Positions 1,831 through 32,552 of a stretch of DNA of 46,698 nt are shown piece by piece; within the stretch, counting starts at the first letter, position 1; each line of letters starts with the position of its first letter. The DNA is from Octopus sinensis. Taxonomy: Eukaryota. Made by a program: the position numbers and the translations under genes. Location of the stretch: NCBI RefSeq assembly GCF_006345805.1, contig NW_021834925.1:1-46698 (forward strand), given 5' to 3'. The notes beneath the pieces are model-generated. The model had not been told where the DNA came from, did not search any database, and was given only the letters and a program-made list of their open reading frames with translations.

Positions 1831-2910
1831 CTTACCGAAATTTCTACACTTCTCTGTAAGGTGACAAAAATTTCCAATTTTGAAATATCTGTTGGTAATA
1901 CATTTGATTAAAGTGAATATCTAAAGAAAATGGATAGCTTTGATCTTTCAAAACACAAAAGCTGATTTCTTTTCTTCCTATCTGCTCTTTTCTTTATGTG
2001 TGTCAGACTAAAGATAATCTCTTTATTCTTAAAAACGACCCGAGCGAATGTGATCTAGTGTGGGCGAATGGGGGTGAGTCTCCGCATTAAATAACGATTT
2101 CTAGTATAAGTAAAAAGCCATAATTTTGGTGTTGGGGTTATACTCTATTAGCTGGAGCCCCAGTATATAATTGGTACTTGTTGTTTCTCTCAGGGAAGGA
2201 TATAAGATGAAGTTGACCATGGTAGGATTTGAACGCTGAATCTCCAAGGGCGAAGTACAGGGTCCCTTTACATTCTAAAATGAAATCCAGCCGAAATCGA
2301 ACAAAAGTTGTTGAGTCAGCTAGAGAATGACCATTTAGAGGGGGCAATCTGCTGCTTGCAGACTTAGTTAATTGCACGTCAATCAAAAACTTATTTTGAA
2401 TTTTCTTTAGTAGTGTTGCCCGCCTGATGATAAACCATGTTTCATGCATGGTTCATCATCAGACGGGCACCATGCCCGCTTTTGGGAAATGTTTGCCCAT
2501 GCCTGCTTTATGTAGCTGTTCGTCTTGCCAGACATTGCTACCAAATTCCCTCAAATGCCGCTGTTCCATCTTACCAACGTTATGGCTAGCTGACTAATGT
2601 AATTCTTGACATGCAAGGCGGTATAGTTACAGGTTTGAATATCTCTCATCCTCTTTCTACATCCAGCATGTCTGACTTGGCGCTAAATATCAACAACAAC
2701 AACAAAACAAATTTCTTGACCTAACTGTTTCGAAATGACATAACGTACAAAAGAGACTGATTCACATTGTACTCTCTCTGTAATTGATTATGGCTTGGGA
2801 TTAATGGAGGGTTAAATTTTAGAATTAAAAGAGAATCTCACTATTGAACTGATACAGGATCGCGATATAGAAGTAATACAGAACATATGAAAACAAGATT
2901 TTTATATTGG

Positions 2911-3122
2911 TTTCAAATTTTGGCACAAACCCAGCAGTTTCGGGAGAGGAGGTAAGTCGATTACATCGACCCCATCAATCACCTTGTACTTATTTTATCG
3001 ATCGCAAAATGATGAAAGGCAAAGTAAACCTCGGTGGTATTTGAACTCAGAATGTAAAGATGGACGAGATACCGACAAGCATTTTGTCCGTTGTGTTAAC
3101 AATTCTGCCAGCTCGCCGCCTT
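2911..3122 (-). mobile_element. tRNA-derived SINE family A (Meta/MESC-domain-like)
   Basis: Minus strand reads aaggcggcgagctggcagaa (A box), gagttcaaataccaccgagg (B box), ctttgcctttcatcattttgcgatcgataaaataagtacaag. The central domain resembles the Meta/MESC domain as I recall it. Confidence 0.85.
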
Positions 3123-3189
3123 TCTAGAAGTTTAAATATTGCCATAAAGAACGGAACCTAGAGGACTGAGTGCATTCGATTAACTAGAT

Positions 3190-3336
3190 CAGACATGGAC
3201 AATCGTTTTCGAAAAGAAGGCCGCATGAGACCAGCCTTATCGTTAGGCAGGTCGAATTTCTAAAAAAAATTCAAGGTAATTTTTAGTTAGGCGTGATATG
3301 TAGAAAGTCCCGTGGGCCGCAATTTGTTCATGTCTG
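3190..3336. mobile_element. hAT-Charlie-type MITE
   Basis: TIRs cagacatggacaa / ttgttcatgtctg; internal cccgtgggccgc. Degenerate 8-bp flanks aactagat / agctaaac fit an NNCTAGAN-type target. Confidence 0.6.
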
Positions 3337-3756
3337 AGCTAAACACTGTAATAATTGACTGATATTATCATTATTGTTGTTTTGCTCCCGCCAAGGTCAA
3401 CCATGATTAATTGGACAAGAAATTAATACCATTATAGTCCTTCCTATCTCACCTTTCATGATTAATTAGTGAGTATTATCAGGTGAATTATTTCCTTAAT
3501 GAAGGACTGAGAGGTAATGTCCATGAGGTTCTTCATTTCATATGCAATTGGCCGTTCTGTTGAATTCTTTTCTTCTTCAATGTCTTCCTTTCTAGTTTCT
3601 TGTTGTGCAAAACCAAAACTTTCAGCAATGAGGAATTGATTATCAAGATCACCTTCATCAACTCCAAACCATTCTTTAATTGGTTCCTAGTTATCAGTAT
3701 TTACAAAGGTACGCTGAAAGCCATTTGCCACAAATCCTTGAACATTTAAATAAATC

Positions 3757-3932
3757 TTCTTCTTCTTCTTCTTCGTCGTCTTCTTCTTCTTCTTCTCCTC
3801 CCCCTCCTCTTCCTCCTCTTCCTCCTCCTCTTCCTCATCCTCCTCCTCCTCCTCCTCCTCCTCCTCCTCCTCCTCCTCCTTCTTCTTCTTCTTCTTCTTC
3901 TTCTTCTTCTTCTTCGTCGTCGTCGTCGTCGT
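3757..3932. repeat. (CTT)n/(CCT)n/(CGT)n trinucleotide tract
   Basis: Read directly. Confidence 0.97.
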
Positions 3933-3989
3933 ATTATTGAGTGAGAGAGAAGAACATGACATCAAAGTGACACTGGGGCACAAAATATA

Positions 3990-4512
3990 TGAAAGCCAAT
4001 ATACTCATCATGACTACACATCTGATGAAGGTACACTAGGCACATGCATCACAACCATATGTGTGTGACAGGGTGGTCTCTTATCAAGATAAACAGCGCA
4101 TGACCTTGCAGGTGGGAGCCCAGTTCGAATCTTCTTCAGTTCGAGTAGCCTATCTCGCGCAAAAGGTCCCTGAATAAGGTTTGCTTAAGTATGATGATCA
4201 AAACACCCATGTTTCCTCAAGTGAATTATTCAAACCCCAAGGAATTTCTTCTTAACACATGGCTATTATGCCCTCCCCCACTACTGCTGTTCGTGATCAG
4301 AGATGCACATATCGTCAGCCACTAAGGGATATGCTCAACTGGTTAAAGTCAAGCAACTGATAAGCAAATCTGTGGTATTGAGCAGAATTTTTGCTGTAGC
4401 CCATCTTTTATACCAAGACAAAGCAATGTACATGATAAAACTTTCAATCAGTTAAGATCAGGAGCAATGAGAGCCAGTACCTGGTATTGCATCAGGGCAT
4501 TTATTATTATTA
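3990..4512 (+). mobile_element. Interspersed repeat family E (probable non-LTR 3' end with (TTA)n tail)
   Basis: Segment 4250-4395 recurs inverted at 27765-27910 (gcaaatctgtggtattgagcagaat vs attccgctctatactacagatttgc). Ends in ttattattattaat. Confidence 0.5.
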
Positions 4513-4715
4513 ATCTTCGCCTTAGCAAAGGCAGGGGTATTGTTTTCAGTCGTGTTTGTTTGTTTATTTGCTTGACTGTGTACAAGATATCTCAAGAACC
4601 GCTGGATGGATTCGGATGAAACTTTCAGGGATGTTTGACATCGTGACTTGCGCGAACTGATTATATTTTGGGATCGATCCGGTACCGGACAAGGATTCTT
4701 TTTTTATATTTTCTT
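4511..4715 (+). mobile_element. DINE-1/HINE-like non-autonomous Helentron fragment
   Basis: ttcgccttagcaaaggcaggggtattgttttc, a (GTTT)n microsatellite, then gatggattcggatgaaactttcag...ttttgggatcgatccgg. This matches the recalled HINE layout (subterminal repeat, tetranucleotide microsatellite, core). Confidence 0.5.
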
Positions 4716-5035
4716 TACGTTGCTTGTATATGTAAAGTTTCACATAGTTCTCTTGTACACATACACACATACATACATATACTCACACTTCAAACGCCGT
4801 TTATCGGTTTTTCCACCACTTCCTCATTATTCATCTATCACCCCTTCCTTTCTCATCCATTCGACGCTCTCTTTGCCATCTATCTCCTCTACCTTCACCT
4901 CTCACTTCGGCTCTATTATGAATGTATGTATGTATGTATGTATGTATGTATGTATGTATGTATGTGTATGTATGTATGTATGTATGTATGTATATGTATG
5001 TATGTATGTATATATAATATATATATTTCAACAAT

Positions 5036-5259
5036 TGAGGGTAAAATTAATTAATTATTAATCAATTTCACCAAGTATTCAGTATGCAAGGGACCATTTA
5101 AGGCAAATTCAAATTATTACATTATATAAAAGGGCTTAGTAAATAAATTACTTTGCCGCATACTGAACTCGTTAGAAATAGCAGCTAAAATAGTTTTTTT
5201 TAGCTGCTATTTCTAACGAGTTCAGTATGCGGCAAATAATTTATTTTACTAAGCCCTTT

Positions 5260-5267
<8 letters not shown>
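5036..5267. mobile_element. Fold-back copy of repeat family F between (TATG)n and (TA)n arrays
   Basis: About 70-bp inverted arms at 5121-5190 and 5198-5267. 5036-5190 is homologous to 5384-5545. Confidence 0.8.
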
Positions 5268-5330
<63 letters not shown>

Positions 5331-5374
5331 GTGTGTGTGTATATAGATATATGTATATATGTATATATATATAT

Positions 5375-5760
5375 AGTAATAACAAAGGGTAAAATTAATT
5401 AATTAAGAAGTAATCAATAATTTCACCAAGTAGAATTCGGCATGAAAAAAGGACCATTTCATGGTAAACTTAAGTAATACTAAATAATTAGGGTTCAGCA
5501 AAGATTTGCTTTACCACATACCGAAGCTTAGAAATAGCAGCTAAAAAACGTTAGCTATTTCTTCTACTTTAAAAAGGGACTCCCAGAAAAACCAAAATAC
5601 TTGAAAACAATCCACACAGGCAGAGAAGAAGAAGTAACGAAAATCAATCAATATCTGGTCACCTATGGACGCGCGTTTCGGAATTAGGTTGGAATGAAGA
5701 ATATAAAATTATACTTTACCAACCGTTTTCCTCTTCAGCATAGGACCCCATCAATAATTA
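5375..5760 (-). mobile_element. Penelope-like (PLE) pLTR-type fragment: hammerhead plus 3' tail ending in (TA)n
   Basis: Hammerhead at 5657-5747 followed on the minus strand by a tail of about 280 nt (family F) that abuts a (TA)n/(TG)n array. Confidence 0.6.
5657..5747 (-). ncRNA. Type I hammerhead ribozyme
   Basis: Minus strand: GGU-CCUAUG CUGAAGA GGAA..GGUUGG..CCAACC..UUCC GAAA CGCGC GUC^ CAUAGG-UG-ACC. Core intact; stem I 6+3 bp with a UG bulge; stem II G10.1-C11.1; palindromic stem III ACGCGCGU. Predicted cut between 5668 and 5667. Confidence 0.85.
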
Positions 5761-6084
5761 AATATTGAAATATTAAATTCGGAGGTACTTGAACCTCATT
5801 CATGTTTTGAATTCGGCATTACTGACGCTTAATATTATCTGTCCGATACCGTTAGGTGGAGAGATATGTTCAATTATTCCAGTACCTTCGAAACTATTTC
5901 AAATGGTGAATTTGTTAACTTTGGCTTGTACTAGATAACGATATTACGGTTACTAAATTTTCTAGAGCTGCTTTGAGATGTCATCTTTACAAAAAATAAC
6001 ATACCAAATCTAATATATAACTTGCGAAGTAAATAAAACTATGTCATTCGGCACATTGCTTCATGATGGTCACTTGCTAGTTCT

Positions 6085-6161
6085 CACTGCACAAAACCGT
6101 GTGCTGCCATCTTTTGGCGCGCTGCAGAACTAATTCGGGAACGTTTTGATACCACCTCGTA
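6085..6161 (-). mobile_element. Mariner-like TIR fragment
   Basis: Minus strand TA|CGAGGTGGTATCAAAACGTTCCCG resembles a mariner terminal repeat with a TA target. No partner end found. Confidence 0.4.
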
Positions 6162-6248
6162 TATGTTTGTACACACGCGCGCTCACCCCCCCCCCAATAA
6201 TAAAGGTGGCTTATTCGCAATTTACAACCAAAACTCAGAACTAAGTAC

Positions 6249-6590
6249 GTCCCTAAAGTGACTAAGAATACTAGTTAGCACCAGCGTTGCTAGACATAAT
6301 AGTCAAAACAACTCTTAGCCACAAGAATGCACTTATCAGCGTGTGATTTCTACGGAGACTCTTATAAGCTGACAAGGTGGGATAACTTAACCCTAGGCTG
6401 CTGGGGGAGAGCCACAGACGAGCATTAATCAAATGCGAAATCACTGATGATCTGGCTATGTCCTGAATGCTGTAGGGAGCTTGCCTCTCTTGTCATTCAA
6501 AAGGTAAATGCTTTCTAGTGGCTAAGAGTTGTTTCACTTTTATTTCTAGCAATGCTGGTGCTAACCAGTACCCTTACTCACCTTAGTGAC
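6249..6590. mobile_element. Long-TIR (about 87 bp) MITE-like / fold-back element
   Basis: gtccctaaagtgactaagaatactagttagcaccagcgttgctag...ctcttagccac pairs imperfectly with gtggctaagagttg...ctagcaatgctggtgctaaccagtacccttactcaccttagtgac. Confidence 0.75.
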
Positions 6591-6591
6591 A

Positions 6592-6654
<63 letters not shown>

Positions 6655-6656
6655 GT

Positions 6657-6691
<35 letters not shown>

Positions 6692-6692
<1 letters not shown>

Positions 6693-7651
6693 GCAATAAT
6701 AATTCTCTAAATGAGATATAGACAGTAACTGCTCCATAACATAAGGGACTAAAGCCATCTGAATATGGCTAGGGACAGGGCAGGGTGGTGGGGGTGTTAC
6801 TGTTGCATTTAGCCCCAGGCGAACATCAACGTCGCCAGATAGGCTTGACACCATCACGGCGTCCTCTATCCTGCAAAGGGAGATAATTCCCCGATGAAGC
6901 GGAAACCACACACGGACCTAGGTTTCAAGGTGTTTGCCTATTATCAACGTATGGTAGGCACCCGCTTCCCCGACGAACCACTCACTCTGCAGGATATTTA
7001 TATAGATTTTCAAGCAAAATACATTTGCTGATTTCGAAAATCTGTTCGACAGCAATAATAATTCTCTAAATGAGATATAGACAGTAACTGCCCCATAACA
7101 TAAGGGACTAACCTAGGTCCGTGTGTGGTTTCCGCTTCATCGGGGAATTATCTCCCTTTGCAGGATAGAGGACGCCGTGATGGTGTCAAGCCTATCTGGC
7201 GACGTTGATGTTCGCCTGGGGCTAAATGCAACAGTAACACCCCCACCACCCTGCCATGTCCCTAGCCATATTCAGATGGCTTTAGTCCCTTATGTTATGG
7301 AGCAGTTACTGTCTATATCTCATTTAGAGAATTATTATTGCTGTCGAACAGATTTTCGAAATCAGCAAATGTATTTTGCTTGAAAATCTATATAAATATC
7401 CTGCAGAGTGAGTGGTTCGTCGGGGAAGCGGGTGCCTACCATACGTTGATAATAGGCAAACACCTTGAAACCTAGGTCCGTGTGTGGTTTCCGCTTCATC
7501 GGGGAATTATCTCCCTTTGCAGGATAGAGGACGCCGTGATGGTGTCAAGCCTATCTGGCGACGTTGATGTTCGCCTGGGGCTAAATGCAACAGTAACACC
7601 ACCCTGCCCTGTCCCTAGCCATATTCAGATGGCTTTAGTCCCTTATGTTAT
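6692..7651. repeat. 359-bp unit in head-to-tail concatemers in both orientations, flanked by (TA)n
   Basis: The + arm 6692-7110 restarts at 7051 (period 359). The inverted arm 7111-7651 restarts at 7470 (period 359). Copies are nearly identical. Confidence 0.97.
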
Positions 7652-7687
7652 ATATATATATATATATATATATAGATATATGAGTGT

Positions 7688-7983
7688 GAAGGAGCATTGG
7701 CTTAGTGGTTAGAGCGTCGAGCTTACGATCGTGAGGTTGTCGGTTCGAATCCCCGACCGGGTTGCGTGTTGTGTTCTTGAGCAAGACACTTTATTTCACG
7801 TTGCTCCAGTTCACTCAGCTGTAGAAATGAGTTGCGACGCCACAGGTGCCAAGCTGTATCGGCCTTTGCCTTTCCCTTGGATAACACTGATGGTCTTCCA
7901 TAAACGACCTTGCCCGGACTTGTGCCTGGGAGGGTAACTTTCTAGGTGCAATCCCACGGTCGGCCATGATCGAAGAGGGTCTC
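7688..7983 (+). mobile_element. tRNA-head CORE-like SINE (family C, tail Y)
   Basis: A box tggcttagtgg, B box ggttcgaatcc, CORE-like cttgagcaagacactttatttcacgttgctccag..cagctgtagaaatgagt. Confidence 0.85.
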
Positions 7984-9125
7984 AATATGTATATGCATGT
8001 GTGTGTGTGTGTGTATGTGTGCATCGTGGGTTCACGCAACAGACGTGAGCATATAAAATAGCCTTGAAATAACACACTACAATCATATTACGTGTGTGCT
8101 AACCTGAGTGAAAATGTATCCTTGTTTTAAAGCCTTTTGTGCATTTATATCACGCAGAGTATATCCCAGAGACAATAGTCTACATCAAACATATTTTTAA
8201 AAAAACATATATTTCTTGGTAGTCTGATTCAGTTCGTTGTTTTTGTGCATACAAAATATCACTTGTAAATGTCCTTTTATTATTCAATTCAAATTCAAAT
8301 TTGAAACGATGGAAATCAAAATTAATACAATTTATGGGCATAATGCAATTCAGAATAATTAAGAATTACCGTCGATACTTTTCCCATTACTATGGATAAG
8401 AACGGAGAAATGTTTGGAAAAGTTTCGTTTTTGTTCAATTCAAATTCAAATTTTAGCACTTACTGTACAACATAGATCCAATCGATGCAGAGTTAGTATC
8501 GAATACTTTCGTTCGGTAAATATACTACAGTGTGGAAACAATCGTCTGATTGTGTAGTTTTTAGCAGACGACACAGTGACTGCATTAACAAAAGAGAAGT
8601 CTTGAATAAAAATGAAATCCATTGTGTTGATTTCTTCAACAGTAGTATCAGCACACACGCACTCAATTACTCACACACTCAAAAACTCACACATATTCAG
8701 AAACGCACACACACACACATATGTGTGTACTTAGATGGATGTCACCCAACTCCGTTCTCTCTCACTCTCTCTCTCTGTCTCTCTCTCTCTCTCTTCACAT
8801 ACCACCATACGGCGATTTTCTCAATTGTTTTTAATTGTATACATCATCGGCAGGCACTCTTGCTATACTACGTTGGTGGAACATTTTGAGAATTGATTTG
8901 TTCCTTGCCAGATGTTTCATGAACGCGATTAATCAACGAACTTTACCAATCCTCTCAAAAATATGACGTAAAACATGGCTTAACTTCAACGTTTAGTTAT
9001 TTCAAAAACATGCAAATTTAAGTCATATAATATATAGTTATGCGACTCACCCCCATTCCCTAAAATTATTTACTTTGTACCAAAATTTGAAGCCATTATT
9101 ATTACTTTTATCTGAGCACCAGCTA

Positions 9126-9905
9126 AAGGGGTGAGCTGGCAGAATCGTTAACACGCTGCACGAAATGCTTAACAGTATTTCGTCTGCTGTTACGTTCCGA
9201 GTTCAAATTCCGCCGAGATCGACTTTGCCTTTCATCCTTTTTGGGTCAATTAAATAAGTACCAGTTACGCACTGGGGTCGATATAATCGACTTAATCCGT
9301 TTACCTGTCCTTGTTTGTCCCTTCTGTGTTTAGCCTCTTGTAATTAATAAAGAAATAGGTATTTCGTCTGCCGCTACGTTCTGAGTTCAAATTCCGCCGA
9401 GGTGGACTTTGCCTTTCATCTTTTCGGGGTCAATATATTAAGTACTAGTTACGCACTGGGGTCGATGTAATCGACTTAATCCGTTTGTCTGTCCTTGTTT
9501 GTCCCATCTGTGTGTAGCCTCTTGTGGGCAATAAAGAAATAAGAATCGTTAGCACGCCGGAAAGAATGCATCCTGGCATTTCGCTGAGTTCAAATTTCAC
9601 CGAGGTTGACTTAGCTTTAATCTTTTCGAGATCGATGAAATAAGTACCAGTTGAGTAGTGGGATCGATGTAATCGGCTAGCCTGCTTCTCCCAAATCTCA
9701 GGCCTTTTGCCTATAATAGAATGAATTATCTTAATACGATTTAAAGCAGCGAGCTGACAGAATCGTCAGCATGACGGAGAAAATGCTTTGTGACATTTCG
9801 TCCGGTTTTACTTTCTGGATTCAAAATCCCGCTGAGGTTGACGTTGTCTCTCATTTTATCGGGGTCGATGAAATAAGTACCTGATGAGCATTGGGGTCAA
9901 CTGAT
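9126..9905 (+). mobile_element. SINE A cluster: dimeric A2 (9126-9540) plus further A copies
   Basis: Repeated A/B boxes and the Meta-like domain. Tail ccccttgtggg..taaagaaat occurs twice. Confidence 0.9.
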
Positions 9906-10109
9906 TGGGTTCAGTAGACTGCAGCTACTCCAACATCTCATCTGTGTGTGCAGATACAAATTATGTAAAAGCAATTTATACAGGGACAAGTCGTGAACAG
10001 CTGATCGGAGGACACCAAAACCCAAACAGCATAGGGATCAGACGCAGCGATAACAAGCCTTTTCGTTATGGGTGTGCTCAAATGTTACTGTAAATAATTT
10101 ATTTCTAAA

Positions 10110-10790
10110 TTTGGCACAAGGCCAGCAATTTTCAGAGGAAGTCAATTATATCGACCTCAGGTGGCGAGTTGGCAGAAACGTTAGCACGCCGGGCGAAATG
10201 CGTAGCCGTATTTCGTCTGCCGTTACGTTCTGGGTTCAAATTCCGCCGAGGTCGACTTTGCCTTTCATCCTTTAGGGGTCGATAAATCAAGTACCAGTTA
10301 CGCACTGGGGTCGATGTAATCGACTTAATCCCTTTGTCTATCCTTGTTTGTTCCCTCTATATTTAGCCCATTGTGTTTAGCCCCTTGTGGGTAGTAAAGA
10401 AATATATATCGACCCCAGGGCTCAACTGGCACCTATTTTATCGATTACGAAAGGGTGGGAGGCAAAGTAGGTCTCGGCAGAATTTGAACTCAGAGTGTAA
10501 CGAGCCGGAAGAAATGCGGCTAACCATTTTATCCGGCGCGGTAATGATTTTAGCAGCTCACCACCTTAATGTCACAGTGATTAATCCTTTCTACTATAGA
10601 CACAATACCTTAAATTTTCGGAGAGGAAGCTAGTCGACCATATCGACCCCAGTGCTCAGCTGGTACTCATTTCCTTGTCATGGAAAAGATAAAAATAAAG
10701 TCGACCTCGTCGGAATTTGAACTGAGGGCCGGACGAAATGCCGTTAAGGATTTAGTCTGGCGTGCTAGCAATTTTATCAATTCGTCACCT
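10110..10790. mobile_element. Nested SINE A copies: + strand A2 monomer (10161-10404) inside a - strand copy, followed by another - copy
   Basis: 14-bp TSD tatatcgacc(t/c)cag at 10147-10160 and 10405-10418. Confidence 0.85.
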
Positions 10791-11064
10791 TAATGTCACA
10801 GTAAATTATACAATGTTCTTCTATGAACACCAATGAAAATTATTATGGCAAGCTTCGACATTAAGCATCTCCAAGAATGGACGAGAATGGACGAACAGAT
10901 AACACGTCTTCATACATTTCTACTCACATTAAATTTTCTTCCTCGTGAAAAATTTGCATGATTTCATTGTTCCGCATTTCTCTCGAGTGTGTGATTTTAT
11001 GGAAGAGGTAAGATCATTTTTATGGTTTTCTCAATGGCTATTTTGACTCTTCAGTTCGAATTAC

Positions 11065-11260
11065 AAAGCTATAAATAATAGTATGTATATATCGGGTTGA
11101 AAAATCCTTTTAGATGGAGAAAGTTGAAGGCAGCCCGTTGGGCACGAACCCGCATCTCTTGAAGAAAATAAAAGCATTTTACTACGGGCAGCCTTCGACT
11201 TTTTCAATTTGAAAGAGTTTTTTAATCCAAAATCTACATTCTATCCTAAATCATAGCTTT
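11065..11260. mobile_element. Fold-back/MITE with a tRNA-like core
   Basis: About 74-bp imperfect inverted arms around 11139-11183. The core reads gtaaaatgc...agagatgcgggttcgtgccc on the minus strand. Confidence 0.55.
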
Positions 11261-11690
11261 AAGTCGGCGATCTGGCAGAATCGTTAGCACGCCGGGAAAA
11301 TGCTTAGTAGCATTTCGTCCGTCTTTATGTTCTGAGTTCAAATTCTGCCGAGGTCGACTTTGCCTTTCATCCTTTCGGAGTCAATGAAATGAATACCAGT
11401 GAAACCCTTGGTCGACTAAGTCCCTCCCCACAAATTTCAGGCCTTGTGCCTTCATTAGAAAGGATTATTCATAGCTTTAAGGTGGCGAGCTGGCAGAATC
11501 ATTAACACGCCTGGAAAAATGTTTTGCAGCATTTCGTCCGTCTTCACGTTCTGAGTTCAAATTCCGCAGAGGTCGAACTTGCCTTTCATCCTTTCAGGGT
11601 CGATAAAATAAGTATCTGTAGAGTACTAGGGTTGATTTAATCGTCTTATCCACTACCCCGAGCTTGCTGGCCTTGTGCCAAGTCTGGAAA
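11260..11690 (+). mobile_element. Two tandem SINE A copies
   Basis: ggcgatctggcagaatcgttagcacg...ctgagttcaaattc at about 11265; ggcgagctggcagaatc at about 11484. Confidence 0.9.
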
Positions 11691-12472
11691 CGACTATTAA
11701 TCATGGCTTTATGCGTACTTCAAAACCTACATTTCGAAAAAAAATTACTTCACGTTCTCTCGAGAGTTTACAAATTCTTATGACGTCATCAAATTATAAA
11801 ACTGTTTTTTTGGACAAATCCTTCTTGAAACAGACAATACTTATAGAATTAAAATGAATTTACCGATAAGATCAAGTCTACCAGAGAATTTATTGCATAA
11901 TTTAATTTTTTTTAAACTAATAACGACTAATATTTTAGTTTTCTTTACGTAATGTTGTCTTTTATTTTCTTTAAGTATTGTATCTAACTAGAATTAAAAT
12001 ATTTTCTACGATGTTTGCATTTAAATGTCTCTATACTCCATTATAATATTTTCTAATTGTTAATTATTCAAAAATATTCTAATTTACTGATATCTCTTCT
12101 TATACTTTCTTCCCACTTCTGCTTTCAAGATAAAAGATGGATTTTCAAATTATTGTACCCGTGAAACCAGCAACTTAAAAATACACATAAATTAATTTTC
12201 ATATCTTTCATTCATTCTCAGTATTTTTATTTTCTCATTTCTCTTTCTTTCTTTCTTTCTTTCCCACTATCTCTTTGCCTGCCTGAGTCTGTCTCTCTCT
12301 TCCCTTCTCTTTCTTGATAGATGTATGCAAATAAGCAACACACAAAAATCCTTGTGTATTTTATAGATATCTGTGGTTATGAATGTGCGTGTACGTGCTC
12401 GCGTGTGTGTACGTGAGTATGTTTCTTACTTCAGAATATTTGACCTTGTGGCAAACATTACGGATATCGAAA

Positions 12473-14070
12473 ATGAAGGTGAGTAGGGCAGAAAGCGGGA
12501 TGAAACGAAAATGCAAAACAGAAACGATCATCTGATTTTGTGAAGTCATTTCTTGAGCAGCTTAATCTTTCACTATTATTAACTAAAGAAGTGTCTTTCA
12601 AACACGCAATGCTAAAACCTTGGATATCAAAAACAGAAAAACAAAAAAAACATAGCCTATAGCATGTTCGATCCAGTATCATGATTTCGGGATCTTCCGT
12701 TTGATATTTAAAACAATGCTTACTTTGTGTTTGAAATAATTTTCAAATTAGTAAAAGTCCATTGAAACCTTTTAGAAAATGGTGGAATCATTAACAAAGC
12801 GCTTCAAGCTTAAATTACATTAGAAAAACCAAAATGGCGAGGCTTTTCTCCACAGAATTCTCCTTCGCATAAAAGTTTAGCTACATAAAACCTTACATTA
12901 CATGGTGACAAGGAATCTTATGGACAGGAAAAGCAAAGCTATTTTGGAAAATTTGGGCGGTTACTAAAATTGTTGGCAAACTTTGATCTCGTCATGAAAG
13001 TGTTTCTCAATAATGAGGACAAGAACACGGGAAGAATTTATTTCTGTCCATTAGTGCGAAATGAATAAATTCACTTGGCGGCTTCTGCTGTTCACCACAA
13101 ATTGCTATATAACATTCATTCATACGACGAAATATTGTGGTTTCGTGTTTGATTCTATTCAAGATCAAGCAAGCCGAGAACAAATGACAGAAACACTTCG
13201 TTATATTCACGTTAATTTTTAAGGAGAAATCAATTTTTTTTATAAAAGAATATTTTTCTAGAATTTATCCAATTAAAACAAAAGGATGCTGAATATATGA
13301 TGGCGGTAATTTGGGATCAACTTGTAAAGGACGAAACGCCATTAGAAGACGATCTCAATGCTGTAGTTATTATGGCTGGTTATTAAAATGGTGTTGAATG
13401 GAGAATTAATAAAGAAAGAAAACCCTGATATTTGGTTGAGATACCCGCTGCTAACCATAATGGTAACATTTTCAGCATCATACGATCCATTTATTCGTTG
13501 TTTTCCTGCTCGATACTCCGTTGACAAAAATTGAAGGATGTCATAGCATTAGTTATTAAATTTGAAACTCGATGGAATCGCATAACAGAGGCTGTAAAAC
13601 CAGTTCACAAATATTTTGGTATCAGAGTGAAAATTTTGCAAAGCCTGCTTTATCGTCAAAATTAAACTCTGTGTAGAAAAGCAGATGAGGTAGGTTCTGA
13701 TTCAAATGTTAACTTTAGCTTTCAATTTCTTGGTTTTGCTTCGATTTTCGAATAAATATATTACTTGGATTCACCGTATTCCAAAGTGATTCCAAGGTTC
13801 TTTCATTAATTTTTATAATGCTTCTTTATGTTTATTTTTTAGGCTACTGAGCATCGATCAGTGAATTGCTTGAAATTCGGCAGAAACAAGCAATGAGTAA
13901 GGGTTATCCCAACAGGTACGCAGAAAAACGAAATACATGATAAACAATCCAGGTATTTAGAGATTACTGTTAATGACTGGAAGAAACTATTGATTGTCAT
14001 CATGAAGAAATGAAAGAAATACTTGCTGACGTCGTTTGAAGTTTCCAAATTAAATTTCTTCTCTGGCGAA
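12473..14070 (+). pseudogene. Decayed hAT transposase (ZMYM1-like / DUF4371 type)
   Basis: Hand translation gives KFGRLLKLLANFDLVMK (about 12950), FDSIQDQASREQMTETLRYIHV (13148-13216), EFIQLKQKDA..MAGY, ETRWNRITEAVKPVHKYF (from 13564). Many stops and frameshifts. Confidence 0.8.
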
Positions 14071-14109
14071 CTTAATAGAACTGGTGGGACAAAAAAATAT
14101 ATACAGAAT

Positions 14110-14253
14110 ACTCAATAGAGTGTTTTTCGTTAGGAAGGACACCCAACCATAGAAACCATGCCATATTAGAAGGTGGAGCTCCCTGCGGTGGATCCTGTAA
14201 AACAGTTCAACTTATGCCAGCAGGGAGAACAGACGTTGAATGATGATGATGAT
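14110..14253 (+). mobile_element. RTE-derived 3' tail fragment with (GAT)n end
   Basis: cgttaggaaggacacccaaccatagaaaccatgcc...aacttatgccagcagggagaacagacgttgaatgatgatgatgat matches the RTE-type 3' end as I recall it. Confidence 0.7.
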
Positions 14254-14255
14254 GG

Positions 14256-15447
14256 ATTCAAAATTTGGCACAAGGCCAGCTATTTTGGGGGAGGGGGGCT
14301 AGTCGATTATATCGACCCCAGTGATCAAGCTATAGTTATTTTATCATCCTCGAAAGGAGGAAAGGCAAAGTTGACCCCGAAGGATTTTGAACTCAGAACG
14401 TAAAGACGAACAAAATACCGATGAGCATTTTGCTTGGAGTGCTAACGATTCTGCCAGCTCACTGCTTTAAGGACGAACCTAATAATGATTTCAAATTTTG
14501 GCACAAAGCCAGTATTTTCGAGTGAGGGGGTAAGTCAATTACATCGACCCCAGTGCTCAGTTGATACTTATTTTATCGACCCCAATGAATGAAATGTTAA
14601 GTCGACCTCGGCGGAATTTGAACTCCGAGCGTATTGATTAAGGACGAACTTAATAGTCATTATTACCAGAGGCAAAAGGCTTGAAATTTTGGAGATTTGG
14701 GGTTAGGCGACTGTATCGACTCCAGTGTTCAACTGGTACTTATTTTATTGACCCCAAAAGGGTGAAAGGCAAAGTCAGCCATTTGAACTTAGAACGTAAA
14801 AACGGTCGAAGGATGAATTTAATAGTTTCAAATTTTGACACAAAGCCACCAATTTCGGTGCGGTGGGGGATAAACCGATAAAATCGTTCCAAGTGTTCAA
14901 CTGGTACTTATTTTATTGACCCCACAAGGATGAAAGGCAAAGTCAACCATGGCAGAATTTGAACTTAGATCGTAAAAACGGTCGAAGGATGAATTTAATG
15001 GTTTCAAATTTTGACACAAGGCCACCAATTTCAGTGCGGTGGGGGATAAACCGATAAAATCGACCCAAGTGTTCAACAGGTACTTATTTTATAGATTCCG
15101 AAGGATGAAAGGAAAAGTCTGCTCCGGGGTAGTTTGAACTCAGAACGTACTGACGGATGAAATGCCGCTAAGCATTTTGTCCGGCATGATAGCAATTCTC
15201 CCAGCTTGCCACCGAGAAGGATGAATTTAATAATGACTTCGAATTTTGGCACAAAGCCAGCAATTTCGGGAGGGGTGCTAAGTTGATTACATCGACCCCA
15301 GTATTCAAGTGGTAGACATTTTCTCGACCCTGAAAGTATGAAAGGCGATGTCAATGTCAGTGAAATTTGAACTCAGAATGTAAACACGGACGAAATGACG
15401 CTAAGCATTTAGTCCGACGTGCTAACGATTCTACCAGCTTACTACCT
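14256..15447 (-). mobile_element. Head-to-tail array of about 7 SINE A copies/fragments
   Basis: Recurring tttcaaattttggcacaa...aactggtacttattttatcgacccc...aaagtcgacctcggcggaatttgaactc. Confidence 0.9.
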
Positions 15448-15599
15448 TATTGGATAAATTTAATATTGAACAACATTATTAATTAGAAATAACCATGAAT
15501 CGATCCCAAATATTCTACTTTTTTTCTTCTGTTTTCACAAGTTCTGCAACAAATAACAATAGGCATAGAATTTGGGGAAAAAATTGTGATGTGAAATGT

Positions 15600-15845
15600 T
15601 TTGTAAATAGTTTCATTTATACTTTCATTTCCTGCAATTTCAGTTTCGTGTGAACTGGTTTTTTTAGAGAAATGATTTCTTAAAAGGAGAAATGAAAGAA
15701 ACAGTTTTTCGTTCGAATGAATAAAGTGTGAACCCCTTTTGATATATTTTCAACTTAGAGATAATTGTTTAGAGATTTCAGGAAGAATCTCTTTTAAAAA
15801 TTTTATCATTTTTGCTGAAGTACTAGAAAAATATACTTCCAAAAA
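15600..15845 (+). pseudogene. Probable hAT C-terminal dimerisation domain remnant (continuation of 12473-14070)
   Basis: VSFILSFPAISVSCELVF*RNDFLK resembles L.IFLTLPVSVASCERSFSKLK; KNFIIFAEVLEK resembles F..II..FA..KARK. Confidence 0.45.
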
Positions 15846-16024
15846 TTAAAAGTGCTTGAATGCTGTGAATATATTGTAATATTGAAATAATCAATAAAGA
15901 ACTGTAAGAATATGAAATTAAACATTTATTTTATCACAGATAACAACATAAAGCAAAGCTGCAATTCTCGTAATAAAAGTATGCAATTTCATTCGTCTTA
16001 TGCGGTGGCTTACTGATATATTTT

Positions 16025-16230
16025 CTGTTATACGTACAAAGCCTGAAATTTTGCGGGTATGGGGAAGTCGATTATATCTACTATAGTGCTCAATTGGTAA
16101 TTATTTCATCGAGCCCGAAATGACGAAAGAGAAAGTCGATCTCGGTGGAATTCGAGCTCAGAACGTAAAGACGGGTCATATGCCGCTAGGTACTTTGTCC
16201 GATGCGCTAACGATTCTGCCAGCTCGCGGC
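16025..16230 (-). mobile_element. SINE A copy
   Basis: gaaagtcgatctcggtggaattcgagctcagaacg...taacgattctgccagctcgc. Confidence 0.85.
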
Positions 16231-16262
16231 CTTCTCTGGGTTCCTAATATATTATTCTACAT

Positions 16263-16695
16263 TAGGCGGCGAGCTGGCAGAAACGCTAGCACGCCGGGCG
16301 AAATGCTTAGCAGTATTTCGTCTGCCGTTACGTTCTGAGTTCAAATTCCGCCGAGGTCGACTTTGCTTTCATCCTTTCGGGGTCGATAAATTAAGTACCA
16401 GTAAAGCACTGGAGTCGATATAATCGACTTAATCCGTTTGTCTGTTCTTGTTTGTCCCCTCTGTGTTTAGCCCCTTGTGGGTAGTAAAGAAATAGGTATT
16501 TCGTCTGCCATTACGTTCTGAGTTCAAATTCCGCCGAGGTCGACTTTGTTTTTCATCCCATCTGGGTTGATAAATAAAGTACCAGTTATAAAGTACCAGA
16601 AAATAAAGCAATATGGTCGATTTAATCGACTTAATCCCTTTGTCTGTCCTTGTTTGTCCCCTCTATGTCTAGCCCCTTGTGGGCAAGAAAGAAAT
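16263..16695 (+). mobile_element. Dimeric SINE A2 with a 16-bp TSD
   Basis: TSD atatattattctacat at 16247-16262 and 16696-16711. Full monomer plus 5'-truncated monomer. Another A copy follows at 16716-16925. Confidence 0.9.
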
Positions 16696-17945
16696 ATATA
16701 TTATTCTACATATAAGACAGCGAGCTTGCAGAACCGTTAGTACGTCGGGCAAAATGCTTAGCAGCATTTCGTCTGTCTTTACGTTCAGGGTTCAAATGCC
16801 ACCGGAGTTAACTTTGCCTCTCGTCCTCTCGGGGTCGATAACATAAGTACCAGTTGAGCATTGGGGTCGATTTAATCGACTCACCCATTCCCCCGAAATT
16901 ACTGGCTTTGTACCAAAATTTGAAACGAATATAATATTCTACATATGCATTTGCCAGGTTCAGAATATATTTTGTCCTTTTTTCAAAGTTGATAGCGTTG
17001 GCAGCCCTATGTATGTCACATCACAGAGTTAGGGTCTACTTAAACTATACGTGTGTGTTAGTCCTGTCTGTCCGTGTTGAGTGAGGGAGATAAGGATTTA
17101 CGTGGTCCTTGTAGTAGTCTTCAGGAATTGTCTGGGTGGTTACAGATGGTTTTTTTTTATGTTCTGACAATAACTGTAGGCTTTTAAACATGTCACAGCA
17201 ACAGAGTCTACCCTCCCAATGTACAAATGGTATTTTATGCTGGTGCAACCCTATTTTTGTAGCCGTGGTGTTTAAACACACAAATTATTATTATTATTAT
17301 TATTATATATTTTTTTGGAGGGCTAGGCATATCTTGATTATAATATCTTTCATATCTAGCATAAATATAGGAATACTTTTATAAGCAAAAATAGGGTAAT
17401 ACAAACACAAAATACCATTTGGACGTTGAAATGGTAATTCATGTTTTGTTACCATATTTTTGTTTATCAACGTATTCCTATATGTATCTTAGTCATGCGT
17501 GTCCTTGTTGAGTGAGGGAGATATGGATTTATTTGGTTTTTGTAGTAGTGTTCAGGGACTATCTGGTTAGTTAGAAACGTTTTCTAATGCAATGTTATTA
17601 CTAGTGGCGAGTCTGGACTTCGTAAACTATCTATTCACTGTGTTTTGTCATGGAGAAAATTTCTCGCTGTAGACAAATGGTGTAGATACACCTAAATCAG
17701 CTTACAGCGCTACCTATCCAGACTGTGAGATGCAAGCATTTCGGAGTAGTTATCTCCTCCTCAGTCACAGAAACCGGGTGGTGGTGTTGCGAGCTGATAA
17801 AAGAGACAATCTCTCTTATGTTATTCTAGTCGCCGTACATCGGCTGGTAGTGTTAATCGGCGGCTGACCGTGATTAAATTACGAGGTAGGAGCACTAAGC
17901 ATTGATGTGTGTTCTAATATTCTGATAGTAACAATCGGTGTTTAA

Positions 17946-18150
17946 CGTTTTAGTGTTCAGATTACTCTGTTAAATGTAATACTTTTTCACTTAAATTGTT
18001 TTGAATTACTCATGCACTATCTTATAGCTTTGAGGTTTCAGTGATGTGAGTGTTTATTTGTAGAATGCCAATGTAGGTTAGGTGTAGGAGGCTAGACATA
18101 AAACATGTAGAATATCTGGGGCAGATATAGCCGGTTTAAACACTAAAGGG
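17946..18150. mobile_element. piggyBac-type MITE
   Basis: TTAA at 17942-17945 and 18151-18154; TIR cgttttagtgttc / aaacactaaaggg. Confidence 0.75.
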
Positions 18151-18594
18151 TTAAACATGTCACAACAACAAAGTGTCCCTTTTCAATGTCCAAATGATTT
18201 TTATGTTTGTGCTACTCTATTTTTGCTTATAAAAGTACTTCTATATGTGTATTAAACATGAAAGGAAGTATAACCAATACTATGCCCAAGCCACACAACC
18301 ACCAAAATTTTTTTTTTAATCCTGCGACCTTGTATGTATATCGGAAATAATGATTGTTTATACTGTTAAATTGTGTATCTTTTGGGTCGCTTTATATGGT
18401 TTTACGATTTTGTATGATAATTTTAAAAACTGTAAGAAACGTACCAATGTACAGCTATGACAGCTTAATACGTACTGAAACTTTGCTTCTAAAATTTCTG
18501 TATGCGCTGCTGGAGTATTTTCTGTGAGTGAACAATTTATCCTTCTGTGACATCCAAGCTGTACTCATCCTGCCTTCTTTCCTGGCGCATTATA

Positions 18595-18900
18595 TCTTTA
18601 TATATAAAATTGAAGTTGTGTGTGTGAGACTCTGTCTCCTCCGATTTAGATTCCTAACTACTCCCACATTTTGCGGTGCAATTTAACCAAAAGCGGGTAT
18701 CTTATAGTCGTCATTCATATCGAGCCCTTCTGGGTATTAGCGCGCGTCTACGATGATTCTACGATTTAAAAAGAAATTACCATAATTTTTCCGCATTTTT
18801 AATGATCTTTGCTCGGGTTATATAAGAGAAGTAACGCTCTAAAAATGCTTATATAGTTATTACCCTTACAAACCCGAGCAACGCCGGGCGATACTGCTAG
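18595..18900 (+). mobile_element. Non-autonomous Helitron
   Basis: A|TCTTTATATATAAAA start; 3' hairpin cccgagcaacgccggg; CTAG|T end. Confidence 0.8.
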
Positions 18901-19725
18901 TCTTGTATAAATTTTGTTGTCTTTAAAAACCCTAGGATGGTATATGAGGAAGATTTGGTTATAATTCTCTACGGAATGACCGCGAGATAAGGTTTCCTTG
19001 TCTCGATTTTGCCTTTCCCGTGGTCGACTTCGTCTTTCATTCTTTCGTGGTCGATAAAATAAAGTACAGGTTGAGCTTTGATATAATCGAACCCCCCTTC
19101 CCTCTAAAATTGCTGGCCTTGTGACAAAATTTGGAACCCTTATTGGATTGCTGTGGCGTTAATGTGAAATCGGTTCTTTCTTGTACACCATCTGGCGTTT
19201 TATTGATTTTATCTTTTGTTTTCGAGTGAGGAATCACCAAGAGTCTTTATTTTCATCGTCCGACAGGATTAGCACCGCAGCTGTGTGTCATTCCAGCATT
19301 TATTTGCCATTTTATATTCGTACTTTTACATTTGTTTTTTACAGAGTTCCTTTTTGTACAACACGAGCCGAGCAATCTCAATGTAAGTGGTTCAAAAGCT
19401 GCAAGCTAACTGTACCCTCTTGGCATGCAGCCAATTGTGCACCACAGTACACTATGTGTAATAACACAGACATTCAGTCACACAGACTAAACAATACATT
19501 TCTGACACATTAAAAGAATTTCCATCGAGTTGATATTTATAATCGTTTACATTTTATGATTTTAAAGTACTTGAAAAACCTAAAGGGGTATTCTATTATC
19601 GTAATTTTATCACATAGTTTAATTAAAAATTCTTATCATTTATCGTTGTTCTCGTAATTGCAAAGTGTTTTCAAGACGTGCATTTGTAATTTTTGTAAAT
19701 TATAATTTTACATTTTTACACAGAA

Positions 19726-19836
19726 ATGAAACCTGCATTTGATAATGGAGTAGAAAAGAGAAAAAGAGCTACGAATAAAAAAAGGAAAAAGAAAAGAAAA
19801 ACAGAAAAAACTTCAAAGTTATCAGTTTTGTCCTGA
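19726..19836 (+). pseudogene. Possible N-terminus of another hAT-type transposase
   Basis: MKPAFDNGVEKRKRATNKKRKKKRK... after an acceptor-like tttacacag. Resembles SG..KRK hAT N-termini; the similarity is weak. Confidence 0.25.
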
Positions 19837-20030
19837 TGCAACATCTACTCCTCCTGATCCGAACACCTTATCAACATTTACTTCGACTCCTGTGAGCACT
19901 TTTACACTTCAGCTTCCAGTTTTAGTTGCACAGGTTCCATCTCTTACTTGATACTGGAATAGATACACTAACACATAATAGTAATCGAGGATGTTAATGA
20001 AATTTTCTATTACACTACAACAAATTCAGT

Positions 20031-20270
20031 GAAGGTACGTTGTTAGGGTATTTGGCTCATGATTGTAAGGTCGTGAGTTCAATCCCAGGTGGCGCGTTGT
20101 ATCCTTGAGCAAGACACTTTATTTCACGTTGCTCCAGTCTACTCAGCTGTCAGAAATGAGTAGTACCTGTCTTTCAAAGAACCAGCCTTATCACATTCTG
20201 TTTTACGCTGAATCTCCCTGAGAACTAAGTTAAGAGTATGCGTGTCTGTGGAGTGCTCAGCCACGCGAGC
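20031..20270 (+). mobile_element. tRNA-head CORE-like SINE (tail X)
   Basis: gagttcaatcccagg B box; cttgagcaagacactttatttcacgttgctccag; tail ccccgagaactacgttaagggt-like, shared with 28677-29061. Confidence 0.8.
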
Positions 20271-20299
20271 AAGCTAAGAGTAAAAGATGTTTTATATGA

Positions 20300-22020: not shown

Positions 22021-22089
22021 TTAAATCATATGCAGAACGGAAAATTAAACAACTTGCCTTTATATAATAAGATATAATGTGACATAACT

Positions 22090-27933: not shown

Positions 27934-28176
27934 CCTTTTAAAGCCTAGCCAGGCTCATTGGCCCGGTTTCCCGGTTCCAATGGCGTATGTGTTCCGCAGC
28001 TGGACGGGACGCCAGTCCATCGCAGCGTTACTCATTTTTGCCAGCTGAGTGGACTGGAGCAACGTGAAAAGAAGTGTTTTGTTCCAGAACACAACGTGTC
28101 GCCCGGTCCAGGAATCGAAACCACAATCTTACGATCATGCTGCTGACTCCCTAACCACTAAACCACGCGCCTCCAC
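27934..28176 (-). mobile_element. tRNA-head CORE-like SINE (tail Z)
   Basis: Head gtggaggcgcgtggtttagtgg..ggtttcgattcc; CORE-like; tail ctgcgatggactggcgtcccgtccag. Confidence 0.8.
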
Positions 28177-31636: not shown

Positions 31637-31681
<45 letters not shown>

Positions 31682-31685
<4 letters not shown>

Positions 31686-32064: not shown

Positions 32065-32103
<39 letters not shown>

Positions 32104-32548: not shown

Positions 32549-32552
32549 ATAT

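What the first reader, a model, noticed from the sequence alone, without database searches (positions are those of the whole stretch)
6692..7651. Young 359-bp unit inserted as concatemers in both orientations inside (TA)n: footprint of a circular-RNA retroelement?
Seen: the + arm has one full unit plus 60 bp (6692-7050, 7051-7110). It flips abruptly at 7110/7111 and runs about 1.5 units inverted (7111-7469, 7470-7651). The same end-to-start junction (ttcgac|agcaat) is read in both arms, so the template was circular or already concatemeric. Both outer ends fuse directly to (TA)n. Copies differ by only about 2 substitutions and one 6-bp indel. The flip lands on the palindrome ACCTAGGT, and the preceding ggacta mimics ggaccta. 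Established: non-LTR retrozymes are tandem repeats of a few hundred bp that produce circular RNAs, and Penelope-like elements leave tandem and inverted terminal repeats. Inference: this is a retrozyme-like circular RNA retrotransposed by rolling-circle reverse transcription plus twin priming or template switching. It lacks a recognisable hammerhead, so it may use an unknown processing motif.
Basis: partly seen in the sequence, partly recalled or inferred. Interest (0 to 1): 0.82.

Follow-up and report, generated by a model that had tools for sequence, protein, structure and literature searches.

The report
Penelope-like retroelement footprint in TA repeat
A 359-base non-coding unit sits about 2.7 times, partly forwards and partly backwards, inside a TA microsatellite, in the pattern that Penelope-like retrotransposons leave, so it is most likely a small passenger of such an element, not a new circular-RNA parasite.

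Summary
A 359-bp unit runs 1.17 times forward (6692-7111) and 1.51 times inverted (7110-7651). The same unit-to-unit joint appears in both arms. The copies differ by 2 substitutions and one 6-bp deletion, and (TA)n lies on both sides.

The unit is non-coding. No hammerhead or other Rfam ribozyme was found. Each full unit carries one very stable 130-nt hairpin. No second copy was found in the window or in any searchable collection.

Five features match the published insertion signature of Penelope-like elements (PLEs):
- head-to-tail partial tandems;
- an adjacent head-to-head inverted 5'-truncated copy;
- a palindrome at the inversion joint;
- a (TA)n target;
- outer ends that stop 44 nt apart in the same polarity (the PLE "tail", i.e. 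two RT start sites).

PLE protein nicks and extends both DNA strands and copies unprocessed multimeric RNA. A circular RNA or an unknown ribozyme is therefore not needed.

My best reading (about 0.5) is a short, hammerhead-less, non-autonomous PLE passenger. The rivals are LINE-type twin priming, DNA-level templated repair at a fragile (TA)n, and misassembly. One locus cannot settle this. The source organism was not verified.

The parts
6656..6692 (.). Left (TA)n flank, half of the target microsatellite. (TC)n lies just upstream at 6592-6654.
   Evidence: TRF; sequence
6692..7050 (+). Full 359-bp unit (copy A). It is the reference for unit coordinates. In the proposed model the top strand here is cDNA and the template RNA is the complement.
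6692..6735 (-). 44-nt stretch (unit 1-44) present at the left outer end and absent from the right outer end. It is the candidate PLE 'tail', i.e. the distance between two RT start sites.
   Evidence: End phases; tail concept
7051..7111 (+). Partial unit (copy B, unit 1-61) following A head-to-tail, with T>C at unit 42. This is the 5'-truncated end of the left arm.
7110..7118 (.). Inversion joint. A 2-nt AA overlap (7110-7111) is followed by the unit's own palindrome ACCTAGGT (7111-7118).
7110..7342 (-). Inverted partial unit (copy C, unit 233->1), with G>T at unit 87. This is the 5'-truncated end of the right arm.
7343..7651 (-). Inverted unit (copy D, unit 359->45) with a 6-bp deletion. Its outer end shares 3-4 nt (TAT) with the (TA)n flank.
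6867..6996 (+). 130-nt imperfect hairpin of copy A (unit 176-305).
   Evidence: Circular fold; local fold of the equivalent stretch
7397..7526 (+). The same hairpin in copy D, read in the proposed sense polarity. Free energy is -62.9 kcal/mol, z = -6.4. The inversion point (unit 233) lies next to its apex.
7649..7681 (.). Right (TA)n flank, followed by the head of a tRNA-derived SINE from about 7688.

Best explanation
This is one fairly recent retrotransposition event of a short (359-nt period), non-coding, hammerhead-less, non-autonomous element. It was mobilised in trans by a Penelope-like element (PLE) reverse transcriptase/GIY-YIG endonuclease.

Proposed steps (all inferred from anatomy plus the literature; none shown directly here):
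2. Each freed 3'-OH primed reverse transcription at one of two nearby internal start sites, unit position 1 on the left and unit position 45 on the right, 44 nt apart.
3. The left cDNA ran 420 nt (1.17 units). The right cDNA ran about 548 nt (1.5 units) and stopped next to the apex of the unit's 130-nt hairpin.
4. The two cDNA 3' ends were joined through a 2-nt AA microhomology beside the palindrome ACCTAGGT. This gave a head-to-head structure whose two outer ends are both element 3' ends.

No circular RNA or self-cleaving motif is needed.
For: Shown in the sequence:
- Period-359 head-to-tail copies in both arms, with the identical joint.
- A head-to-head inverted arrangement with both arms truncated at the inner end.
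- Outer ends at unit positions 1 and 45 in the same polarity.
- (TA)n on both sides, while (TA)>=6 tracts make up 2.2% of the window.
- The joint abuts one of only two 8-bp palindromes in the unit.
- No hammerhead or other ribozyme.
- No coding capacity.

From the literature:
- PLE insertions form partial tandems, often with an adjacent inverted 5'-truncated copy and a 30-40 bp 'tail' at one end only. Naiad PLEs prefer (TA)n, lack hammerheads and occur in Octopus spp. (PMC8557442).
- Palindromes are common at PLE inverted junctions (PMC3846280).
- Purified PLE protein cuts and extends both strands in AT-rich DNA. It starts RT at two adjacent internal sites that are not homologous to the target, and the interval between them is the 'tail'. 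It works on unprocessed RNA, and hammerhead mutants insert normally. The authors propose multi-copy transcripts as the natural template (PMC11167929).
- Non-autonomous Chlamys PLE derivatives make multicopy head-to-tail insertions.
- Animal non-LTR retrozymes are pLTR-derived PLE passengers.
- O. vulgaris has 31 recently active PLE families (PMC13282606).
Against: - This is a single locus. No other copy exists in the window or in any collection I could scan, so fixed termini and a target preference are not demonstrated.
- No autonomous PLE, RT or endonuclease domain is present in the window. No sequence link to a PLE pLTR could be tested.
- The polarity of the template is inferred only from the geometry.
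- 44 nt is slightly longer than the published 30-40 nt tail. It can equally be read as a 17-nt overlap in classical twin priming.
- Cephalopod Naiads are reported as ancient remnants, which argues against a young Naiad-driven event if the host is an octopus.
- Canonical PLEs carry hammerheads.
- The source organism is unverified.
- A DNA-level template-switching repair can reproduce the same geometry.
Confidence: 0.5

Rival explanations
1. The unit is a retrozyme-like element whose RNA is excised by an unknown self-cleaving motif and circularised. It is then copied by rolling-circle reverse transcription, with twin priming giving the inversion.
For: - Unit size (359 bp), GC content (46%) and tandem form resemble mussel retrozymes of 350-390 bp.
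- Circular folds are more stable than shuffled sequences (z = -3.2 and -4.4).
- The period-359 template is compatible with a circle.
Against: - No hammerhead, HDV-like, twister, hatchet, pistol or hairpin ribozyme scores even at E<=10 on either strand or across the joints.
- No CUGANGA core is present. The only look-alike, CCGAUGA-AGCG-GAAA, has no helix II.
- Only 57-60% of bases are paired and the fold is not rod-like.
- PLEs need neither cleavage nor a circle to make this structure.
Confidence: 0.1
2. LINE-type target-primed reverse transcription with classical twin priming on a single multimeric transcript of at least 951 nt from a 359-bp tandem array. The first cDNA covers positions 1-420. 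The second is primed internally at position 404 (17-nt overlap) and runs to 951.
For: - The geometry fits exactly, with a small overlap as in L1 inversions (arithmetic).
- There are 3-4 nt of TAT microhomology at the internal priming site.
- Dong-R4, RTE and CR1 LINEs are recently active in O. vulgaris.
Against: - There is no poly(A) or element-specific 3' tail.
- The left junction has 0-1 nt of homology.
- The combination of multicopy tandems, (TA)n targeting and a junction palindrome is the PLE signature, not a LINE signature.
- No LINE fragment lies nearby.
Confidence: 0.12
3. A DNA-level event. A break in the fragile (TA)n tract was repaired by microhomology-mediated, template-switching synthesis (MMBIR-like), or by capture of rolling-circle-amplified extrachromosomal DNA. 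The donor was a 359-bp satellite-like array of at least 592 bp, and one strand switch gave the inversion.
For: - All four junctions have 0-4 nt of microhomology and no filler.
- Long (TA)n tracts are known break-prone sites (general knowledge).
- The strand switch lies at a palindrome beside the apex of a strong hairpin.
- Only 1.65 donor units are needed (arithmetic).
Against: - No donor array is present in the window.
- Three independent low-homology switches are required.
- It does not predict both outer ends lying in the same 44-nt stretch of the unit in the same polarity (about 0.25 by chance).
- It does not predict the overall match to the PLE pattern.
Confidence: 0.2
4. Assembly artefact: chimeric or palindromic long reads, or a mis-joined repeat.
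For: PLE-type tandem/inverted structures are known to be hard to assemble. Inverted repeats are a common failure mode.
Against: - The two outer flanks are different unique sequences, (TC)n plus a hairpin element on the left and a SINE on the right. They are not mirror images.
- The arms are out of register (61 versus 233).
- Each arm carries private variants.
Confidence: 0.05
5. A DNA transposon: a Helitron/Helentron rolling-circle concatemer, or a foldback element with long repeat-built terminal inverted repeats.
For: Helitrons insert at AT dinucleotides and can carry tandem arrays. The locus has long inverted arms.
Against: - In either orientation there is no 5'-TC or 3'-CTRR terminus and no subterminal 3' hairpin.
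- The inverted arms are offset by 44 bp at the ends, so there are no true terminal inverted repeats.
- No transposase or Rep domain is present.
Confidence: 0.03

Closest known systems
Naiad/Chlamys-clade Penelope-like elements and their non-autonomous derivatives (e.g. MRC1 of Chlamydomonas)
   Same: Partial or multicopy head-to-tail insertions, an adjacent inverted 5'-truncated copy, an extra short stretch at one end only, strong microsatellite bias ((TA)n for Naiads), and no canonical hammerhead.
   Different: There is no RT/GIY-YIG ORF here, and no sequence link to any autonomous Naiad could be tested. The unit is only 359 bp. Cephalopod Naiads are reported as old remnants, whereas this insertion looks young.
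Metazoan non-LTR retrozymes (hammerhead-bearing tandem repeats, now viewed as pLTR-derived PLE passengers)
   Same: Tandem monomers of a few hundred bp, GC below 50%, non-coding, and presumed PLE-dependent mobilisation.
   Different: The defining type I hammerhead is absent. A circular RNA is not shown. The published descriptions I read do not mention an inverted arm or a (TA)n target for retrozymes.
Canonical Penelope/Poseidon insertions (e.g. Pen2a_Av of Adineta vaga; PAc of Anolis)
   Same: Direct plus inverted pLTRs, a palindrome at the inverted junction, a 31-40 bp tail equal to the interval between two RT start sites, cleavage and extension of both strands, and AT-rich targets.
   Different: Those elements carry an ORF between the pLTRs and a hammerhead in the pLTR. 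Here the whole insert consists of repeats of one short unit.
L1 5'-inversions by twin priming
   Same: Head-to-head geometry from priming on both target strands, with a small overlap (17 nt) between the two copied segments.
   Different: No poly(A) tail, a periodic template, and a (TA)n target.

Membership tests
Metazoan non-LTR retrozyme | Tandem repeats of a non-coding monomer of about 170-400 bp with GC below 50% | tested here: met
   359-bp unit, GC 46%, 1.17 + 1.51 copies. No credible ORF homologue.
Metazoan non-LTR retrozyme | A type I hammerhead ribozyme in each monomer | tested here: not met
   Rfam cmscan at E<=10 over 6200-8200, both strands, and at gathering score over the whole window: no ribozyme family. 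No CUGANGA core on either strand.
Metazoan non-LTR retrozyme | Expression as small circular RNA | not testable with these tools
   No transcriptome data. The circular fold is only moderately stable (z = -3.2 and -4.4).
Penelope-like element insertion (autonomous) | An ORF with PLE reverse transcriptase and GIY-YIG endonuclease | tested here: not met
   No Pfam domain in the unit ORFs or in the 150 longest ORFs of the window. At most this is a non-autonomous passenger.
PLE-type insertion signature (autonomous or non-autonomous) | Partial or multicopy head-to-tail tandem (pLTR-like) | tested here: met
   The unit-to-unit joint is present in both arms.
PLE-type insertion signature (autonomous or non-autonomous) | An adjacent inverted 5'-truncated copy, head-to-head, often with a palindrome at the joint | tested here: met
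   The arms meet at unit 61 | unit 233 beside ACCTAGGT. 'Head-to-head' rests on an inferred polarity.
PLE-type insertion signature (autonomous or non-autonomous) | An optional 30-40 bp 'tail' at one outer end (two adjacent RT start sites) | tested here: inconclusive
   The outer ends differ by 44 nt in the same polarity. This is slightly long, rests on a single locus, and is also explained by a 17-nt twin-priming overlap.
PLE-type insertion signature (autonomous or non-autonomous) | AT-rich or microsatellite target ((TA)n for Naiads; a microsatellite bias is also attributed to Neptune) | tested here: met
   (TA)n on both sides. (TA)>=6 tracts cover 2.2% of the window.
PLE-type insertion signature (autonomous or non-autonomous) | The 3' region is shared with an autonomous PLE of the same genome | not testable with these tools
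   No host genome, Repbase or Dfam access. The supplements of PMC8557442 are not held.
LINE-mediated insertion with twin priming | A poly(A) or element-specific 3' tail plus a target-site duplication | tested here: not met
   No tail other than the target (TA)n. A duplication cannot be read inside a microsatellite.
Helitron | 5'-TC and 3'-CTRR termini with a subterminal hairpin, inserted between A and T | tested here: not met
   The termini are AGCAAT... / ...GTTAT, and in the other orientation ATAACA... / ...TTGCT.
Satellite DNA | Long homogeneous arrays at one or more loci | not testable with these tools
   Only 2.7 units are present here, with no other copy in 46.7 kb. The genome-wide picture is unknown.

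The most novel reading that the evidence does not exclude
The unit represents an animal family of hammerhead-less, retrozyme-like elements. Their RNA would be processed and circularised by a self-cleaving or protein-assisted motif not yet described, perhaps within the 130-nt hairpin. It would then be copied by a PLE reverse transcriptase in rolling-circle mode.
Probability: 0.07. Interest if true: 0.8.

Novelty: new member of a known kind. Interest (0 to 1): 0.4.

Why it matters
If the PLE reading is right, this locus is a compact, nearly undecayed record of one PLE-type integration. In under 1 kb it shows both primed strands, both reverse-transcription start sites, the tandem read-through and the cDNA-cDNA joint.

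PLE transposition is still poorly understood. A 359-nt hammerhead-less passenger would be a convenient minimal template for in vitro work. It would also show that short tandem PLE passengers in animals need not carry a ribozyme.

It would further indicate recent PLE activity in the host. If the event instead proves to be DNA-level repair, the locus is an ordinary example of templated insertion at a fragile (TA)n tract.

Tried and rejected
1. Other copies. blastn of the unit against the window found only this locus. Exact-pattern scans of JGI metagenome contigs (two scans), GTDB genome contigs and IMG/VR (two scans) gave 0 hits. These collections probably hold no cephalopod DNA, so the result says little.

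2. Reaching host-genome contigs through called ORFs. The 88-aa unit ORF, a SINE ORF and a zinc-finger-like ORF had no homologues in the 5.8-billion-protein index. A full HMMER pass gave only four low-complexity, repeat-type hits. The unit is therefore treated as non-coding, and the organism stayed unverified.

3. A literature string search for SINE sequences found nothing.

4. Ribozymes. None were found by Rfam or by motif search. The CCGAUGA...GAAAC look-alike lacks helix II and has C at the conserved U4 position.

5. An autonomous partner in the window. No RT, endonuclease or transposase domain was found.

6. A second repeat family next to (TA)n (31680-43180) turned out to be an ordinary tRNA-derived SINE, not a PLE-like structure.

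7. Structure at the putative RT start sites. None was found beyond chance (z = 0.18).

8. The 'ggacta/ggaccta' mimicry as a template-switch guide. By hand pairing, it gives no more than 2 bp in the orientation that would produce the observed inversion.

9. Helitron or TIR termini are absent.

Full report
**Observation**

- Copy A is 6692-7050 (359 bp).
- Copy B (7051-7111) repeats unit positions 1-61, with one substitution (unit 42, T>C).
- From 7110 the sequence is the reverse complement of the unit. Copy C (7110-7342) is unit 233->1, with one substitution (unit 87).
- Copy D (7343-7651) is unit 359->45. It has no substitution and one 6-bp deletion in a GGTGG-repeat context.
- The joint GTTCGAC|AGCAAT occurs at 7050/7051 and, complemented, at 7342/7343.
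- The flanks are (TA)n at 6656-6692 and 7649-7681.
- A (TC)n tract and a 340-bp hairpin-like element lie upstream. A tRNA-derived SINE head lies downstream.
- The two arms overlap by AA (7110-7111).
- The palindrome ACCTAGGT at 7111-7118 is the unit's own (unit 225-232). It is one of only two 8-bp palindromes in the unit.
- (TA)>=6 tracts occupy 2.2% of the window.

**What the unit is not**

- It has no second copy in the 46.7-kb window.
- It does not code for protein. Its longest circular ORF (88 codons) has no homologue in the indexed search. A full HMMER pass over 1.84 billion representatives gave only low-complexity, repeat-type hits. Pfam gave nothing credible.
- It contains no known RNA family. 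Rfam at E<=10 over 6200-8200, both strands and covering every joint, lists only microsatellite-driven miRNA noise and the neighbouring SINE's weak tRNA match. The whole window has no match at gathering score.
- There is no CUGANGA hammerhead core on either strand. The nearest look-alike, CCGAUGA-AGCG-GAAA, has no room for helix II.
- The window holds no reverse transcriptase, endonuclease or transposase domain among its 150 longest non-repetitive ORFs.

**What the unit has**

- Folded as a circle, it is more stable than dinucleotide shuffles (z = -3.2 for the top strand, -4.4 for the bottom strand). Only 57-60% of bases are paired, so it is not rod-like.
- Most of the signal comes from one 130-nt imperfect hairpin (unit 176-305), at -62.9 kcal/mol and z = -6.4.
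- The inner end of the right arm (unit 233) lies next to the apex of this hairpin.
- The stretch around the outer ends shows no structure beyond chance (z = 0.18).

**Geometry**

If the top strand of the unit is taken as cDNA, so that the template RNA is the bottom-strand sequence, both arms read outward-in in the same way.
- The left cDNA starts at unit position 1 at the left (TA)n and runs 420 nt, ending at phase 61.
- The right cDNA starts at unit position 45 at the right (TA)n and runs about 548 nt, ending at phase 233.
- Both outer ends are then element 3' ends, 44 nt apart. Both inner ends are 5' truncations, joined by 2 nt of microhomology.
- The right outer junction shares TAT with the flank. 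The left shares 0-1 nt.

**Comparison with the literature**

Craig et al. 2021 (PMC8557442):
- PLE insertions are 5'-truncated partial tandems (pLTRs).
- They often have an inverted 5'-truncated copy adjacent at the 5' end and a 30-40 bp 'tail' at one end only.
- The Naiad clade lacks canonical hammerheads, has a strong (TA)n insertion bias and is present in Octopus spp.
- Non-autonomous Chlamys derivatives such as MRC1 make multicopy head-to-tail insertions.

Arkhipova et al. 2013 (PMC3846280):
- Direct plus inverted pLTRs occur with a 31-bp tail on one inverted pLTR.
- Palindromes are common at the inverted junction.

Frangieh et al. 2024 (PMC11167929):
- A purified PLE protein cuts and extends both strands of AT-rich DNA.
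- It starts reverse transcription at two adjacent internal RNA sites that are not homologous to the target. The interval between them is the 'tail'.
- It uses unprocessed RNA as the dominant substrate. The authors propose multi-copy transcripts of the tandem locus as the natural template.
- It inserts equally well when the hammerhead is mutated.

Other sources:
- Cervera and de la Pena 2020 (PMC7229834) describe metazoan retrozymes as tandem repeats of about 300-390 bp with type I hammerheads.
- A 2026 preprint argues that these are pLTR-derived, non-autonomous PLE sequences.

Every structural feature of this locus has a counterpart in that signature: tandem copies, a head-to-head inversion, a junction palindrome, the (TA)n target, no hammerhead, and an extra stretch of about 40 nt at one end.

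**Best explanation (confidence about 0.5)**

This is one integration of a short, hammerhead-less, non-autonomous PLE passenger. It was made by PLE-type target-primed reverse transcription on both nicked strands of a (TA)n tract, from a transcript with a 359-nt period. The steps are inferred from anatomy plus published biochemistry. None is shown directly here.

**Caveats**

- This is a single locus.
- The polarity is inferred.
- No partner element is known.
- 44 nt is a little longer than the published tail.
- Craig et al. state that cephalopod Naiads are ancient remnants. This argues against a young Naiad-driven event.
- Bonar et al. 2026 (PMC13282606) report 31 recently active PLE families (336 insertions) in Octopus vulgaris, so some PLE machinery may be active there.
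- I could not verify that the window is from an octopus.
- The low divergence between copies (2 substitutions in about 600 compared bases) suggests youth. Gene conversion between adjacent repeats could also keep them alike.

**Rivals**

It shares the retrotransposition part, but the circle and the ribozyme are neither needed nor supported.

(b) LINE-type twin priming on one multimer of at least 951 nt (0.12). The numbers fit, with a first cDNA over 1-420 and a second primed at 404, a 17-nt overlap. But there is no 3' tail, and the overall pattern is PLE-like.

(c) DNA-level microhomology-mediated template switching, or capture of extrachromosomal DNA, at a fragile (TA)n (0.2). A donor of at least 592 bp and three low-homology switches reproduce the structure. 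This does not predict the shared end region or the full PLE pattern.

(d) Misassembly (0.05). The flanks are different unique sequences, the arms are out of register and each carries private variants, which argues against a chimeric palindrome.

(e) Helitron or foldback DNA transposon (0.03). The required termini are absent.

**Verdict**

- I file the feature as a probable new member of a known kind. It works like a non-autonomous PLE derivative.
- It fails the defining hammerhead test for membership of the retrozymes.
- Its membership of a PLE-dependent family remains untested, because the genome and TE libraries were out of reach.
- Interest is moderate (0.4). It is a clean natural record of a poorly understood integration mechanism, but it is one locus and is explicable by published biology.

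Noticed in passing
window 6249-6590: A roughly 340-bp near-palindromic element (arms 6249-6335 and 6505-6590, about 84% complementary) lies directly upstream of the (TC)n-(TA)n tract. It is MITE- or hairpin-like and has no other copy in the window.
   Followed up: partly
window 7688-8000: A tRNA-derived SINE whose head abuts the right (TA)n flank (sub-threshold Rfam tRNA match, 18.3 bits). It ends in a (TG)n-rich tail. Three diverged relatives (76-81% identity) lie at about 20055-20161, 28030-28165 and 29544-29676.
   Followed up: partly
window 31680-32044, 38789-38977, 39212-39426, 39569-39931, 41914-42276, 42801-43180: A SINE family of about 380 bp with a tRNA-like head and an internal (TG/TA)n stretch, 88-92% alike. 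Two copies in opposite orientation bracket 42277-42800. Several copies sit beside (TA)n tracts.
   Followed up: partly
window 9175-9541 and 14715-15119: Tandem dimers (period 184 and 176; 2.0 and 2.4 copies; 86-88% matches) of another abundant SINE-like family of about 225 bp. That family has at least 10 copies across 2897-22750. Whether the dimers arose by head-to-tail retro-insertion was not examined.
   Followed up: no
window 23513-24150, 25212-25640, 43856-44170: Minisatellite arrays: a GTGGTAGTGGTGGTT-type array (15/39-bp period), a purine-rich GGGAGAGAGA-type array, and a CCT/CCA-rich array with a 30-bp period. Together with many (TA)n, (TG)n, (TATC)n and (TCT)n tracts they make the window extremely rich in simple repeats.
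   Followed up: no
window 45626-45906 (- strand): Two overlapping ORFs in different frames carry CxxC...H motifs. Two of the 150 scanned ORFs (the tool does not say which) matched Pfam zf-C2H2 weakly (best E = 0.0023); by eye these are the likely ones. They may be a frameshifted zinc-finger gene fragment. No homologue was found in the protein index.
   Followed up: partly
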